The position numbers and the translations under genes were made by a program. A stretch of DNA of 64,000 nt from Octopus sinensis (taxonomy: Eukaryota), in NCBI RefSeq assembly GCF_006345805.1, contig NC_043003.1:30876001-30940000 (forward strand), given 5' to 3'. Of this stretch, positions 52,482-61,670 are shown one piece after another. The notes beneath the pieces are model-generated. The model was not told the origin of the DNA. It did no database searches and saw only the letters and a list, made by a program, of their open reading frames with translations. Numbering within the stretch: position 1 is the stretch's first letter; every line of letters begins with the position of its first letter.

Positions 52482-53152
52482 GTATCCTTTTTAAACATTT
52501 TGATTTTATTCTTTCATTCATCACCACAATTGAAGTTACTAAGATATACACATTTACCAGTGCATATGTACACAGTCATTTATACTTTCATCTTCAATAG
52601 CATACATAGATATATACCTTCATACACACACATGCACTATTATAATGAAAGCTAAAAAAAAAAATTATGAAATACAGTTACCCAGTCTTTCCTAGGCATC
52701 CTGTTAATTTATTTTGCATTTTTTAATGATAGAATTCATGCCTATTAATGGTTACAGAAATGCAAATTCCAATGCATCAAGCAACAATGATTCAGATGTT
52801 GGCAGGCAGAAATATTATCCCAATAAAAATTCTTATTAGTGCAATTATTACTATAATAATATCTTTACTGCCTTAACTGATCAAATGCTATTGCTTGTTG
52901 AAAATCACACACATGCACCCCACCAATCATCATCATACATCCGTTTTCCATGCTGGCATGAGTTAGATGGTTTGACTGGAATTGGTAAGCTGGAGCGCTG
53001 CACCAGGCTCCTGTTTGGTTTAGCTTGGTTTCTATGGCTGGATGCCCTTTCTAATGCCAACCATACCACAAAGTGTACAAGGTACCTTTTACATGTTGCT
53101 GGCAGAGGTGTTTTCTCGAGTACAGCAAATTGCCAAAGGTCTCAATCATTTG

Positions 53153-53199
<47 letters not shown>

Positions 53200-55289
53200 T
53201 ATATGGTGAGAGATTTGAGCAAATAGGAGAAATAGGGAAAAAATAGGACTAACTGCATACATATATACATATATAAATTGGCTGTAAAGTTACATAAGTG
53301 AAACTCTTGGCAACTGAGTCACTTCTGTAACTTTCGGAGGAAGTAAGTAAATCGTGATAGACCATTAATGAAAGCCAAACTTAGTCAATCCCATCTTCCA
53401 CTCTTATGTTGGTGACAGCCCTGTGGTTCCACCACAGGGTCTACTTTTGCAACAAGGCTAAATATATGTTTGGTAAACATATGGTGCTAAAGCTGCTTAC
53501 AAAATTTAATCTCACACATACTGCATTGATGCCCTCATACACACACACACACGCATGCACACACCCAATACATTCCATATCAGAAATGCTGTTTTTATGC
53601 CATTCTACTTTTCTTGTGGTAATTGCTGCAGTTTTGTTATTGCTTACTTTTTCTTTTGCTTTTTATTTATTTATTTTTTGATAAAAAAAATTGGTTTCCT
53701 TTCAGGAATTTTCTGTTATTTTCTGTTTCTGTTATTTTTTCATTTCAAATTCTACAGATTTTTTAAAAAATTATTCTTGTTTATAAAATTTTCACCTTTT
53801 CTACTTTTATTTCTTTTCATGAATTTTATTTATCATCATCAATATCATCATCGTCATCATTATTATAATTTTGTTTTTTTCTGTCTGTTATTTGTCATTT
53901 ATTTATTCGTGCTTGGAGGAAATGTATGATTTGATTGTGGCAGGGTCTGTGACTGGATCAATACATTCCTTCAGTTGCATTTCCTCTATCCTTCAGCATC
54001 TTCAGTTACATCGCACCAACCAACTATTCCATCATTGATGTGTTATTGAGAGAGATTGTATTGAGATAGATTCTAGCTAGATTCCCAATGATAACTAGCT
54101 ACTCCTCTACCCTCCCGTATATAACTTTTATTCGTCTGTGACCTACTTGAGGAGGGGTGGAGGTGGTGGAATGCAATCCTTTCTCTTTCCTCCGCTACCT
54201 GTTCACCCATCTCCCTTCCACCTCACTCTTTCTTTTCCCTGAATTTTATCAATATATCTTCGCTCTAATTCTAACAGTTATTGAAGTAATCTAACACACA
54301 CACACACATATATATGTATTGAAAGAGAGAGACATACACACACGTGACCATGTAACCATACACATATTCACACATGCATACTTCTATATGCATATATATT
54401 TGTGTGTGTGTGTGTGTGTGTGTATATATAATGTAAACACACACTCACACAAGTGTAAACATTCTCAGATACACATGCTAATACATATATCTTTAAACAC
54501 CTTCACGTATAGTGATGTTCTTCTAATAGATGATAAGTTAAGATATGCAACAGCAATAACAACATTCAATTATGCATAGACTGATTTCGTATGTTATTTA
54601 ATACTTCTGTTACTATTTTCCTGATATAACATAAAGCATGGCTGTGTAGCTAAGAAGCTTGCTTCCAAACCATGTGGTCTTACGTTCAGTCCCACTGTGT
54701 GGCATCTTGGGCAATTGCCCTCTGCTATTGCTTCAGGCTGACTAAAGCTCTGTTGGTGCATTTGTGTGTGTGTTTGTCCCTCATCACCCCAACCAGTGTT
54801 GGTTTGCTTAAGTTTCTGTAACTTAGCAGTTTGGTGAAAAGCGATGGATAGAATAAGAAACAGGCTTTAAAAGGAGAATCAGTTCTGGGGTTGATATGTT
54901 TCACTCAACCCTTAAAAACAATACCCCAACATGGCTGCTGTCCAATGACCAAAACAAGTAAAAGAGAAAAGATATCAATATTTTCAAATTAATTTTGAAA
55001 ACGATCAAGAATTTGGAGTAATTTAGTAAAAGTGGTTTGACTGGTCTCCATTAGTCTGTATATAAGTATATATTTGCAGGCTTGGGCAAGGGTTCACTTT
55101 TTGAAGACTAGCAGTTGCCCATGAAGTAAGTTTCTCTTCTTTTGTTCAATGGAAAGATTTTCCTTAGAAGCTGATATTGCTTTACACCATTGTTGTTACA
55201 TATGTTCCATCAGGGCTGCAGGAATTCAAAATGCCACTACAAATACTGCATGACATTTAGAAGTAATATGGAGAAATCAAGAGTATTCT

Positions 55290-58031: not shown

Positions 58032-59857
58032 TATATACTTGTTACTAGCCTCAGCTGGCCAACCTCAGTGGGATTTCAACTTTGAATACAAAAGGCCAAA
58101 ACAAAATGGTTAGGTATTTAGTTTTCTCTACCATTTCCATTACTCTACCACTTTCATGATGATTATAGTAATGATAATGATTTTTATTAAAATATTTGCT
58201 GACTTTTGTAACAAACCATTCCTGCTCAAAATAGCATTCAAATCTCCTTTAATAAATTCATGATTGACTTGAAAATAGGAATCATGTTTTTGATAAATAC
58301 TATATTTTAAGGCAATCTGTCTAAAAAAAAAGTTAGGACAATCATCTCTAATATTCTCTGATTGAATAGTAACATTCAGCTAACCCACTCAAAAGATATA
58401 TTGTGTTTGCATGCCATGGCTGTTACTTCATGCATCTGATCTGCTTGCAAAAGGTTTGCTTGATGAGAGAGCTAACTGTATTTTTTCAACAGCAATAACA
58501 AGCACTTTTCATAAACTGCTTAATGCTCTGGATACCAATTACTAAGCGGTCTCCAATAACTGTACATAATTCATTTTGATCTTTCTTCTGACGTGGATAC
58601 AATTGAGCATCTTCCATAATCTCAATCCAGCTCGTCCAGATCAATTTTACTATTGATTTTTATGTCCTTACTCTATCTTGGCATTTAGCGTCTATCAACA
58701 TATCTCTTACTGCTGTCTTTCACTGTAAAATCAACATTTAGTCAGCTTTTAGAGAAACTATTTGTGTATGTGTAGTAACTGTTTGTATTAATTTAAAAGT
58801 GTCAAATAATACATATTTTTGCATGTTTTAAAATCTTTGAAATTTTACTCCATAAATACTCTCATATTACCCTGTTTCTCTCCACTTGCAAAAATGTGTG
58901 CATGCACACTCGCACACATGCAAAAACATACACATTTAAATCCTTCCGTCAATGTCAAGTAACACTTCGATCCCACACTGTTCACTGCCTTTCCAGCTCT
59001 CACTGATTTGTTCAACCACATGTACATACATCTTCTCCGCAAACATGCAAACATGAATAAACTAGATTCTTCCTTTTTACAAGGTCTCATGCACTCACAT
59101 CATGCCTCCTTTATCCATCCTACCTCATATATCCACAAATATTAACAAATTAGGAGTTCCCTCTACTTTCCTCAAGATATATCAGGAATCTCTGTGTATA
59201 TATTTATAGGAAAATTCAGTTTGAATGCTGGATTATATTAAAATTTTGTCTGTTATCTATCTTGTTTTGTAAAGACATTATTGCAGAACAGCTGTCTCTT
59301 GATGTGTTAGATTTTTAATCCTTTTAATTCCTGATTTTTCCAAAATCTACATTAAGAGAGGAAACACTATCAAAACAACATTAACGCTTTTATTACCACA
59401 TGTCTGTTGAAATACACCTCCTTTAATTCATTTAATTTTGAAAATAGGGATTTACTAAAATAACTTTATTATTAAGCAGGTGTTTGGTATATAAATTAAC
59501 ATGAAATTTTGATGGAAGATTTTAATTTAGCTTATTTTAAAACCAAAAGTTTGTATCATATGACTAGGGGCAGTCTCTGGTGAGTTGGGGTCAATAGAGT
59601 TAAGAGAAGGAACAGCACTTACAAGTCTGTCATTAGATCCTTATTGAAGCAAGGTGAAAATATTGTATATCAAAATAGTAATTCAAATTTCTTACTAGAG
59701 CTTAAAGCCAGTTTTTGGTGGTGATGGTGGAATTGGGATCCTAAGTATACTAAATTAATCTCTTCCTCTCTTAAGTGGTGGTTCTATTGTAAATTTCACT
59801 TAAAGAAAATAAAAGCTGAAATAAGATCTAGCAAGACTGGAATTTTAGAGCCTAGAC

Positions 59858-60188
59858 CAGGCCTGGCCAACTTCAATTACATTGCGGGCCACTTTAATCA
59901 CAGAAAGTATTTTGAGGGCTGCTTGTATACTGACAGAATTGAAAGCATTTTGTTTTCTCACGCAATTATTATAACAATGAATGAATGATTGTTCATTCAA
60001 CATGAAATGTTATCACTGCAAAAACAGTAGTATCTTTCTTTTTTACTTCTCATTACAATCTTTAATTTTCGATAAAATTTTTTAAATGTTTGTTTAAATA
60101 AACCCATTTCAAGAAAGTATCAAGTGGGCCGCAAGATAAAAGTCTGCAGGCTGCATGCAGCCCATGGGCCTCAGGTTGGCCAGCCCTG
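59858..60188. mobile_element. hAT (Charlie-like) MITE
   Basis: TIRs CAGGCCTGGCCAAC / GTTGGCCAGCCCTG; 8 bp TSD GCCTAGAC / GCCAAGAC (7 of 8 match). Confidence 0.8.
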
Positions 60189-61670
60189 GCCAAGACAAAT
60201 GAGCCTAAATATTGGACTAGTGTACTACTGCTAAGACTGGCTGATGGCCTTTTTTTTTTTTTGAAGTATTGAAAATTAAGAGATGAGTTAACAATAAGGT
60301 TATAGTTAACAGATTTCAGATATTTGGAGATTAAAAATGTTTCTGTACTTTACATGCATCAGTGGCCTATCATCGTTGTCCTCATTGTTGTTATCATCAT
60401 TGTCATCATCACTATCATTATCATCATTTTACATTTGCTTTCCATGCTAGTAAGTGTTGGATTGTCAGGGTTTGAACCAGTTCTTATTCAGAACTGTTGC
60501 CCTCCTATGTGGGTCAGAGGTTCATGTCTTGCTCATATGTTCCAGCACTTGAAGAAAATAATCATTATCCTTAGGGCAGAAATAAGAGTACCCAGCTCAG
60601 ATCTAACATGGTATTGTATGTCTTTTGGAAAATCTGATACGTAATGATTGAAATGCAATATAGGTGCCGATATCTGGAGAAATCTTTCATGCGTAACGGT
60701 GACATAAATAATTTTAAAATGTTTTATGAACATAAAACTTTGTAAATGCTATATGGATAACATATTTGGCCTCATCAGGGAGACTGATTATCCTTTTCAG
60801 ACATCTGAAATAATTCCAGCAATAAATAACTTCTTACATTTTACAAAACCCAAATGTGTCCTATACTAGGTACACATTAAGTTTACTGTACTCAGTGAAG
60901 TTTAAGTTATGTACTGGATGTGAACAAATCAACTATATCTGGCCTAAAATAATGCTAATTCATTGATCTTGATCTGCTAGAAATAGTAGCTGAATCAAAC
61001 CCCAAATTTGTGGCACGTTTTTTTTCTGTTTTCCTTTTTCCATTTTCCATACTTTTTCTGTTTTGCAACTTACTTGCGGACCTCACTAACATCAGTTGTT
61101 GGAAAAAGGCGCTTAAGATGATTGGTGTCAGGGAGAGCTGTAGGAAACATGTCAAATCTGATGCTGGAGCCTGGTGCAGCCCTGCAGCTCACTAGATCGT
61201 ATCAAACCATCCAACCCATACTTGCATGGAAAATGGGTATTAAATGACAATGGTGATGATGAGTTTAGGTATGCACTAAAAAAAATATAATGTCATGTTA
61301 TATATGAAAACTAAAATACTGTAGTCCAGGTATGGGCTTCAGGAAAAAGGAAAACAATAAGATTATGTAGTCTAGTTATGGGTTATGGTTGAGAAAAAAT
61401 AAGAAGGGATGATTGTGGTTGGAACATGCTTAATCACATGACTACTCAAACAAACAATTGAAGCATGATGTAGCCCTTGGACACATGAAATCCTGTCAAA
61501 CCATTCAGTCCATGCCAGCATGAAACTTGGTCGTTGGATGATGTTGATGATATGTTGTTACTTTGTGATAAGATGTTTTTGTGAAACAGTTTCATTATTT
61601 CCACAACAGTGATTTTCTTGCAGTTTCATTATTTCCACAACAGTGATTTTCCTTAACTAGGTTCTAACAG

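What the first reader, a model, noticed from the sequence alone, without database searches (positions are those of the whole stretch)
52482..61670. A 9.2 kb minor-spliceosome (U12) intron splits the catalytic RxxMED motif of a PP2C phosphatase
Seen: donor GTATCCTTT, branch TTTTCCTTAAC about 14 nt from the CAG, no pyrimidine tract, and a clean phase-1 join giving GWRI-N-MEDAH. Established: these are the U12 consensus signals; such introns are rare, deeply conserved and often rate-limiting for expression. Inference: output of this phosphatase depends on minor-spliceosome activity. The intron is large and filled with transposons.
Basis: partly seen in the sequence, partly recalled or inferred. 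Interest (0 to 1): 0.75.

Follow-up and report, generated by a model that had tools for sequence, protein, structure and literature searches.

The report
Ancient U12 intron in octopus PP2C
A 9.2 kb intron in an octopus protein-phosphatase (PP2C) gene carries textbook signals for the rare "minor" spliceosome, and the same intron sits at the same codon in snail-like molluscs, a tick and a starfish; it is genuine and ancient, but an ordinary member of a well-known intron class.

Summary
The intron is 52482..61670 (9189 nt). It starts with GTATCCTTT, the only RTATCCTT in the 64 kb window. It carries TTTTCCTTAAC at 61647-61657, which puts the branch A 14 nt before the terminal AG, with no pyrimidine tract in between.

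Joining 52481 to 61671 (phase 1, codon 35) gives MQGWRI-N-MEDAH. The joined 63 aa peptide is 62/63 identical to the annotated Octopus bimaculoides "protein phosphatase 2C T23F11.1", which uses the same junction.

An intron at the same codon and phase, with U12-type donor and branch boxes, is present in:
- four unnamed mollusc-like genomes (GTATCCTT, GTATCCTA or ATATCCTT);
- the tick Rhipicephalus sanguineus;
- the starfish Asterias.

A fifth mollusc-like genome shows only the acceptor side. The intron is absent, with the two exons fused, in Nematostella and in many insect-like genomes.

So this is a real U12-type (GT-AG) intron at least as old as Bilateria. Its removal should need the minor spliceosome. 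That it limits expression is not tested. At least 24% of the intron is interspersed repeat.

I found no paper describing it, and no PPM1 gene appears in the supplements of the vertebrate-centred Minor Intron Database paper. It is a new member of a known kind, of modest interest.

The parts
52359..52376 (+). U2-type acceptor of the intron upstream of exon A: T-rich tract followed by a tandem TAGCAG acceptor (52373/52376)
   Evidence: Sequence ttttttttttttctagcag|acATGG; 15 of 20 pyrimidines at -23..-4. O. bimaculoides and Argonauta models carry ..D before MGHT, which fits a split G|AC codon.
52377..52481 (+). Exon A (start codon at 52379): MGHTLSEPVTSKTTSSCENHYVKVGSSCMQGWRI plus the first base of codon 35
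   Evidence: The 63 aa exon A + exon B peptide is 62/63 identical to O. bimaculoides P0093.
52482..52490 (+). U12-type 5' splice site GTATCCTTT
   Evidence: 9/9 match to the RTATCCTTT consensus and the only RTATCCTT in the window. Matches the U2 consensus MAG|GTRAGT at only 3 of 9 positions.
52482..61670 (+). U12-type GT-AG intron, 9189 nt, phase 1, in codon 35
   Evidence: orthologous U12-type introns in L001/2, L003, L004/5, L011/12, L014 and L015.
52922..53095 (.). Interspersed repeat copy inside the intron (at least 9 related copies elsewhere in the window)
   Evidence: blastn of intron against window.
54624..54981 (.). Interspersed repeat copy inside the intron (about 15 related copies elsewhere in the window)
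56348..57144 (.). Further dispersed-repeat segments; 82-87% identical to 32119-32437 and 36346-36516, 68-72% to 37902-38418
57248..58032 (.). Foldback: two inverted arms of about 300 nt (81-91% complementary) containing a mariner-like reading frame remnant
   Evidence: the frame ..WFWQDGATAHTA.. at 57638-57871 (-). Not confirmed by Pfam.
61587..61651 (+). Perfect 34-nt tandem duplication (1.9 copies) ending inside the branch-site box. Copy 1 ends ..TTTTCTTGCAG, a U2-like decoy acceptor that would be out of frame.
61647..61657 (+). U12 branch-site box TTTTCCTTAAC (branch A about 61656)
   Evidence: 9/9 match to TTCCTTRAY, the only TCCTTAAC on the + strand, 14 nt from the 3' splice site.
61669..61670 (+). 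3' splice site AG
   Evidence: The only nearer AG (61659-60) is 4 nt from the branch A, which is too close.
61671..61754 (+). Exon B (84 nt, phase 1 to phase 1): (N)MEDAHTHLLSLPSDRDCCYFGVFDGHG(G)
61755..61760 (+). U2-type donor GTAAGT of the next intron (GAG|GTAAGT)
   Evidence: An intron at this position is also present in Nematostella, Asterias and the insect-like genomes, but not in the tick.

Best explanation
The interval 52482-61670 is a genuine U12-type (GT-AG subtype) spliceosomal intron. It lies in the octopus orthologue of the PP2C phosphatase family annotated 'protein phosphatase 2C T23F11.1' (the C. elegans ppm-2 / insect Ppm1 type).

Inferred mechanism:
- U11 snRNP pairs with GTATCCTTT at 52482.
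- U12 snRNP pairs with TTTTCCTTAAC at 61647-61657, bulging the A at about 61656.
- The U4atac/U6atac.U5 tri-snRNP catalyses removal, joining 52481 to 61671.
- This re-forms codon 35 (AAT, Asn) inside GWR-I-N-MEDAH, which holds the phosphate-binding Arg33 and the metal-site Glu37/Asp38 of PP2C enzymes.

Any mRNA that retains the intron stops after 39 extra codons and lacks all catalytic residues beyond Arg33. Active phosphatase therefore requires minor-spliceosome activity.

Shown here: the signals, their non-random placement, the junction in related annotated proteins, and conservation of position, phase and class across Bilateria. Inferred: the snRNP steps and any kinetic (rate-limiting) role.

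The intron is at least as old as the bilaterian ancestor. It was deleted precisely on the lineage to insects, and it is absent from the one cnidarian examined. Its large size in octopus is secondary, from insertion of repeats.
For: Signals in the window:
- Perfect 9/9 donor and 9/9 branch box, with 14 nt spacing and no pyrimidine tract.
- Each motif is unique on the + strand and lies exactly where the protein alignment requires. Expected background is 6.3 and 2.4 per 128 kb.
- The flanking introns have strong U2 signals instead: T-rich tract + TAGCAG upstream, GAG|GTAAGT downstream.

Junction:
- The exon A + exon B peptide is 62/63 identical to the annotated O. bimaculoides protein and 92% to Argonauta hians. 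Both read GWRINMEDAH.
- A cDNA-like mollusc contig (L006) and the 310 aa protein P0061 have the uninterrupted junction.

Orthologous introns at the same codon and phase:
- L001/2: GTATCCTTG ... TCCTTAAC
- L003: GTATCCTAT ... TTCTTTAAT
- L004/5: ATATCCTTT ... TTCTTTAAC, ending AG
- L011/12: GTATCCTTG ... TTCCTGAC
- Asterias L014: GTATCCTTT ... TTTCTTAAC
- Rhipicephalus L015: GTATCCTTT ... TTCCTTGAC
Only the two boxes are conserved. Intron lengths range from 662 to 9684 nt.

A switch between GT and AT as the first dinucleotide among orthologues is typical of U12 introns (established knowledge). Molluscs, Octopus sinensis among them, are reported to have many minor introns, and minor introns avoid phase 0 (PMC10639083).
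Against: - There are no RNA reads from the window's own species, so use of the junction there is inferred from close relatives.
- No formal intronIC or PWM score was computed.
- The minor-spliceosome snRNA genes were not looked for outside the window; none lie in it.
- Nematostella lacks the intron, so an age older than Bilateria is not supported.
- The perfect 34-nt duplication abutting the branch box could be an assembly artefact or a recent change of unknown effect.
Confidence: 0.9

Rival explanations
1. The intron is removed by the major (U2-type) spliceosome, and the U12-like boxes are coincidental or vestigial.
For: Its ends are GT-AG, which both spliceosomes accept. Conversion from minor to major type is a known evolutionary path (PMC10639083).
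Against: The donor matches the U1 consensus only at GT plus the +3 purine. There is no pyrimidine tract. Both U12 boxes are perfect and have been kept in tick, starfish and molluscs while the rest of the intron is unalignable. Chance placement is about 1e-8.
Confidence: 0.04
2. The intron is a 'hybrid' or dual-use intron. The 34-nt duplication supplies a U2-like acceptor (TTTTCTTGCAG at 61610-61622) that competes with the U12 acceptor and gives alternative, non-productive transcripts.
For: The duplication and the decoy acceptor sequence are present.
Against: Use of that acceptor would add 47 nt and hit a stop after 7 codons (read directly). A U12 donor does not normally pair with a U2-type 3' end. 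The annotated relatives use the 61670 acceptor.
Confidence: 0.03
3. Exons A and B are not a functional gene here: a pseudogene, or a mis-assembly that joins them across unrelated sequence.
For: Only two exons of the gene lie in the window, and exon 3 is not found before 64000. The exact read-through ORF is not in the public gene index.
Against: Both exons are intact and differ by one residue from the O. bimaculoides protein. The splice signals are perfect. There is no assembly gap inside the intron; the only N run is at 26654-26753. Asterias has an equally long (9.7 kb) intron here.
Confidence: 0.03

Closest known systems
U12-type (minor, 'AT-AC class') spliceosomal introns, GT-AG subtype, as catalogued by U12DB, IAOD, MIDB and intronIC surveys
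   Same: Donor RTATCCTTT, branch box TTCCTTRAY 10-15 nt from the 3' splice site, no pyrimidine tract, non-zero phase, a single such intron among U2-type introns, deep positional conservation, and precise loss in insects.
   Different: Nothing in kind. The host gene family (T23F11.1 / ppm-2 / Ppm1-type PP2C) is not in the human and mouse minor-intron gene lists I could search: no PPM1* gene occurs in the MIDB paper's supplements. I found no paper describing this intron.
PP2C/PPM phosphatases: C. elegans T23F11.1 (ppm-2), insect Ppm1, PDB 2i0o, human PPM1A (1a6q), PPM1B (2p8e) and PPM1G
   Same: Pfam PP2C match. The MQGWRxxMEDAH and FDGHGG motifs sit at the same residue numbers as in PPM1A (Arg33, Glu37, Asp38, Asp60; residue roles are from established knowledge of the 1A6Q structure). 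The N-terminal MGxxxS fits the myristoylation consensus. Best PDB matches are 2i0o (1.5e-68), then PPM1B and PPM1A (about 1e-57).
   Different: The protein is short (about 310-320 aa) and lacks the acidic insert of vertebrate PPM1G. No vertebrate sequence is among the 120 best homologues, so one-to-one orthology to a human gene is not established.

Membership tests
U12-type spliceosomal intron | 5' splice site matching /RTATCCTTT | tested here: met
   GTATCCTTT at 52482-52490, 9/9; the only RTATCCTT in the window.
U12-type spliceosomal intron | Branch-site box TTCCTTRAY complementary to U12 snRNA | tested here: met
   TTCCTTAAC at 61649-61657, 9/9, preceded by TT.
U12-type spliceosomal intron | Short branch-to-3' splice site distance (about 10-15 nt) and no polypyrimidine tract | tested here: met
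   14 nt from A61656 to G61670; the intervening sequence is CTAGGTTCTAACAG.
U12-type spliceosomal intron | Terminal dinucleotides GT-AG or AT-AC (rarely AT-AG and others) | tested here: met
   GT..AG in the window. The L004/L005 orthologue is AT..AG with the same boxes.
U12-type spliceosomal intron | Same position, phase and class in orthologues | tested here: met
   Four mollusc-like genomes (a fifth shows the acceptor side only), Rhipicephalus sanguineus and Asterias. Absent from Nematostella and the insect-like genomes.
U12-type spliceosomal intron | The predicted junction is used in mRNA | tested here: inconclusive
   Annotated O. bimaculoides and Argonauta proteins and a cDNA-like mollusc contig have the junction. 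No reads from the window's own species are available.
U12-type spliceosomal intron | Excision depends on U11, U12, U4atac and U6atac snRNPs | not testable with these tools
   Needs knockdown or minigene experiments.
U12-type spliceosomal intron | The host organism has a minor spliceosome | not tested
   No snRNA gene in the window (Rfam). The literature reports many minor introns in molluscs, including Octopus sinensis (PMC10639083).
PP2C (PPM) phosphatase, T23F11.1/ppm-2 type | PP2C domain with the GWRxxMEDAH and DGHGG metal-site and phosphate-site motifs | tested here: met
   PF00481 at E 2.5e-5, above the cut-off, on the 63 aa peptide. 98% identity to O. bimaculoides 'protein phosphatase 2C T23F11.1'.
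PP2C (PPM) phosphatase, T23F11.1/ppm-2 type | Complete catalytic domain (motifs up to the C-terminal DN..) | not testable with these tools
   Only the first two coding exons lie in the window. No exon 3 was found before 64000.

The most novel reading that the evidence does not exclude
This U12 intron has been held at one codon of a PP2C gene since before the protostome-deuterostome split. It is missing from the human and mouse minor-intron gene lists searched, and no vertebrate is among the 120 best homologues of this phosphatase. The nearest vertebrate relative by motifs, PPM1G, is known as a pre-mRNA splicing and SMN-complex phosphatase. The intron could therefore be the sensor arm of a feedback loop in which minor-spliceosome capacity sets the dose of a phosphatase that acts on snRNP assembly.
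Probability: 0.05. Interest if true: 0.55.

Novelty: new member of a known kind. Interest (0 to 1): 0.25.

Why it matters
- It adds a well-supported, bilaterian-old minor intron in a signalling phosphatase family outside the vertebrate-centred catalogues.
- It gives a clean example of precise intron deletion in insects set against retention in a tick, a starfish and molluscs. It also shows a GT to AT subtype switch among orthologues.
- For cephalopod biology, this PP2C belongs among the genes whose output should fall when minor splicing is impaired.
- It does not change any concept. Genome-wide classifiers run on annotated octopus genomes would be expected to flag it.

Tried and rejected
- Looking up the window's own read-through ORF in the gene index: not on record, so the source species is inferred only as an Octopus close to O. 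bimaculoides.
- Look-ups of the Branchiostoma and Limulus isoforms failed, because only the longest product of a gene is indexed.
- Exon 3 and the upstream exon of isoform X3 were not found in the window.
- Pfam on X-masked reverse-transcriptase-like and mariner-like frames gave nothing, even at E 5. I therefore do not claim these as identified transposon genes. Only the dispersed-repeat evidence stands.
- Rfam found no RNA gene in the window.
- Literature searches for PPM1/PPM1G/PP2C together with U12 or minor intron, and for cephalopod minor introns, gave nothing relevant. The maize ZmPP2C26 paper concerns a non-U12 event.
- A second RTATCCTW in the tick gene (L015:10812) lies inside a short intron, 15 nt from its donor. 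I dismissed it as chance.
- I ran no further search on a census of donor read-through peptides or on vertebrate PPM1G, because the verdict did not depend on it.
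Full report
**1. The observation**

- The + strand reads ..tgcatgcaaggatggcgaatca|GTATCCTTTTTAAAC.. at 52481|52482, and ..GTGATTTTCCTTAACTAGGTTCTAACAG|atatggaagatgcgcat.. at 61670|61671.
- An ATG at 52379 opens 103 coding bases that end in phase 1. Joining them to 61671 gives MGHTLSEPVTSKTTSSCENHYVKVGSSCMQGWRI-N-MEDAHTHLLSLPSDRDCCYFGVFDGHGG. Pfam recognises this as PP2C (PF00481, E 2.5e-5, above the cut-off).
- The intron is 9189 nt.
- The branch box TTCCTTAAC occupies 61649-61657. The likely branch A (61656) is 14 nt from the last intron base.
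- The only nearer AG (61659-60) is 4 nt from the branch and so is unusable. What lies between the box and the 3' splice site is not a pyrimidine tract.
- One correction to my own first reading: exon B ends at 61754 (84 nt, phase 1 to phase 1), and the next intron starts GAG|GTAAGT at 61755.

**2. More than chance**

- RTATCCTT occurs once in the 64 kb on both strands, at the exon end. Dinucleotide shuffles expect 6.3.
- TCCTTAAC occurs once on the + strand; shuffles expect 2.4 on both strands.
- Requiring the first motif at one fixed position and the second within about ten allowed positions gives a joint chance of about 1e-8.
- The flanking introns show the opposite, U2-type signature. Upstream of exon A there is a long T run plus a TAGCAG tandem acceptor. 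Downstream of exon B there is GAG|GTAAGT. The U12 donor itself matches MAG|GTRAGT only at GT and the +3 purine.

**3. What the gene is**

- A search with the 63 aa peptide, and a second with the full protein read from a cDNA-like mollusc contig (L006), place it in the family that NCBI names 'probable protein phosphatase 2C T23F11.1' (the C. elegans ppm-2 type).
- The window peptide is 62/63 identical to Octopus bimaculoides isoform X3 (P0093) and 92% identical to Argonauta hians (P0102). The window therefore comes from an octopus close to O. bimaculoides.
- Both annotated proteins read ..MQGWRINMEDAH.., which is the predicted junction.
- The protein is short (about 310-320 aa plus tails) and has no PPM1G-like acidic insert.
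- The best solved relatives are 2i0o (1.5e-68), then PPM1B and PPM1A at about 1e-57.
- Residue numbering coincides with PPM1A. The intron therefore splits codon 35, between Arg33 (phosphate binding) and Glu37/Asp38 (metal site). The roles of these residues come from established knowledge of the 1A6Q structure and were not tested here.

**4. Conservation: the decisive test**

Gene calls on raw contigs read through splice sites, so they reveal intron states directly.

*Fused exons.*
- About 45 clusters have exons A and B fused and then run into junk straight after GHGG. These are genomic DNA that lacks this intron but keeps the next one.
- Their closest named relatives are insects: Periplaneta at 100%, Homalodisca at 97% and Megalurothrips at 95% over 63 aa. 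One cluster is named Gonioctena.

*Intron present.* One ORF reads ..GWRISILEKD, which is A|GTATCCTT translated, and several others start at MEDAH. Fetching their DNA, plus three named genomes, gave an intron at the identical codon and phase in the following:

| Locus | Source | Donor | Branch box and 3' end | Length (nt) |
|---|---|---|---|---|
| L001/2 | Logan, mollusc-like | a\|GTATCCTTG | AATCCTTAACTTAAACCAG\| | 965 |
| L003 | ENA | a\|GTATCCTAT | TTTCTTTAATAAGGTAACAG\| | 934 |
| L004/5 | ENA, nearest Gigantopelta | a\|ATATCCTTT | TTTCTTTAACTGTATTAG\| | 1222 |
| L011/12 | nearest Batillaria, 97% | a\|GTATCCTTG | TTCCTGACCAGCACTAG\| | 1725 |
| L014 | Asterias, GCA_032118995.1 | a\|GTATCCTTT | TTTCTTAAC + 16 nt to ..TATAG\| | 9684 |
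| L015 | Rhipicephalus sanguineus, GCA_013339695.2 | a\|GTATCCTTT | TTCCTTGAC + 14 nt to ..CCAG\| | 662 |

- L007-10 show the acceptor side only (..TACCTTTACTCACACAATAAAG|).
- Outside the two boxes the introns are unrelated.
- Nematostella (L013) has the exons fused.
- The intron is therefore present in Lophotrochozoa, Ecdysozoa and Deuterostomia, so it is at least as old as Bilateria. It was deleted precisely on the way to insects. Whether the cnidarian state is a loss, or the intron is a bilaterian gain, is open.
- The taxon labels of the unnamed contigs rest only on the similarity of a 63 aa peptide and are approximate.

**5. How it most likely works**

- By class, U11 recognises the donor and U12 the branch box, and U4atac/U6atac.U5 catalyse removal. 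This is inferred from the established mechanism of U12-type introns.
- Exon A is a small internal exon of about 105 nt, bounded by a strong U2 acceptor and the U12 donor. Cross-exon interaction between the two spliceosomes is therefore plausible, but it is an inference.
- A transcript that retains the intron reads ..GWRISILFKH.. and stops after 39 extra codons. Such a transcript makes no active enzyme.
- That this step limits expression is a general proposal for minor introns and is not shown here.

**6. The intron's content**

- 24% of the intron matches other places in the same 64 kb. This is a lower bound for interspersed repeats, which include two short families with 9 to 15 copies in the window.
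- A foldback of about 785 nt (57248-58032) has arms of about 300 nt that are 81-91% complementary.
- Frames that look like reverse transcriptase and like mariner by eye did not reach Pfam significance. 'Filled with transposons' is therefore only partly supported.
- The intron is long in Asterias too, so length as such is not special.

**7. A detail at the 3' end**

- A perfect 34-nt tandem duplication (61587-61651) ends inside the branch box.
- It leaves the box intact and creates an upstream ..TTTTCTTGCAG. Using that as an acceptor would add 47 nt and a stop.
- It may be a recent polymorphism or an assembly artefact. I could not compare it with O. bimaculoides because the look-ups were exhausted.

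**8. Comparison with what is known, and novelty**

- Everything fits the U12 class. The phase-1 position and the GT/AT switch among orthologues are typical.
- Pan-eukaryotic surveys report many minor introns in molluscs, including Octopus sinensis, and find that minor introns avoid phase 0 (PMC10639083).
- No PPM1 gene appears in the supplements of the Minor Intron Database paper (PMC6717393). No paper links this PP2C family to U12 splicing.
- It is thus a new, well-supported member of a known kind. Automated classifiers have very likely already flagged it in bulk data. Interest is modest.

**9. Not done**

- RNA-seq, formal PWM scoring, and the state in nematodes, crustaceans, amphioxus and vertebrate PPM1G.

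Noticed in passing
window 61587-61651: A perfect 34-nt tandem duplication abuts and partly forms the U12 branch-site box. The first copy ends in a U2-like acceptor, TTTTCTTGCAG. It may be a recent polymorphism or an assembly artefact.
   Followed up: partly
window 57248-58032: A foldback of about 785 nt inside the intron: arms of about 300 nt that are 81-91% complementary, carrying a mariner-like frame remnant (..WFWQDGATAHTA..). It would form a long double-stranded hairpin in the pre-mRNA, a possible ADAR substrate in a cephalopod.
   Followed up: partly
window 52371-52376: The acceptor in front of the first coding exon is a tandem TAGCAG (NAGNAG-type). The octopus and Argonauta models carry different residues just upstream of the conserved D-MGHT.
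   Followed up: no
window 52379-52399: The N-terminus MGHTLSE (MGQTLSE in nearly all orthologues) fits the N-myristoylation consensus MGxxxS. The Q3H change is shared by Octopus and Argonauta.
   Followed up: no
window 23735-25300 (minus strand): A non-LTR retrotransposon remnant. The ORF 24728-25300 matches Pfam RVT_1 (E 1.3e-15), and the adjacent ORF 23735-24211 looks like its C-terminal part.
   Followed up: partly
window 27314-27917: A GC-rich minisatellite with a unit of 61/121 nt, about 10 or 5 copies at 80-89% match, flanked by long (TA/GT)n-type microsatellites at 26771-27146 and 28232-28856. An assembly gap of 100 N lies at 26654-26753.
   Followed up: no
window 34981-35384: A tandem repeat of a 134-nt unit, 3 copies, 97% identical.
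   Followed up: no
window 62676-63134: A long (AAT)n microsatellite, about 152 units, in the intron downstream of exon B.
   Followed up: no
L004 and L005 (ENA ERZ25071447 ctg86751, 115-135 kb and 228-248 kb, opposite orientation): Two near-identical copies of the PP2C 5' region, including the AT-AG U12 intron, lie about 100 kb apart in inverted orientation on one contig. This is either a recent inverted duplication or an uncollapsed haplotype.
   Followed up: no
L006:244-252: A cDNA-like mollusc contig carries an in-frame TAG where relatives have CAG (Gln67), while the otherwise 96% identical P0061 is intact. The cause may be a sequencing error, an allele or a processed pseudogene.
   Followed up: no
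L015 (Rhipicephalus sanguineus) 1065-1229: In the tick, the intron after GHGG that is present in octopus, starfish, Nematostella and the insect-like genomes is absent: exon B runs on into AKVAQYAG... The two neighbouring introns therefore have opposite loss patterns in ticks and insects.
   Followed up: partly
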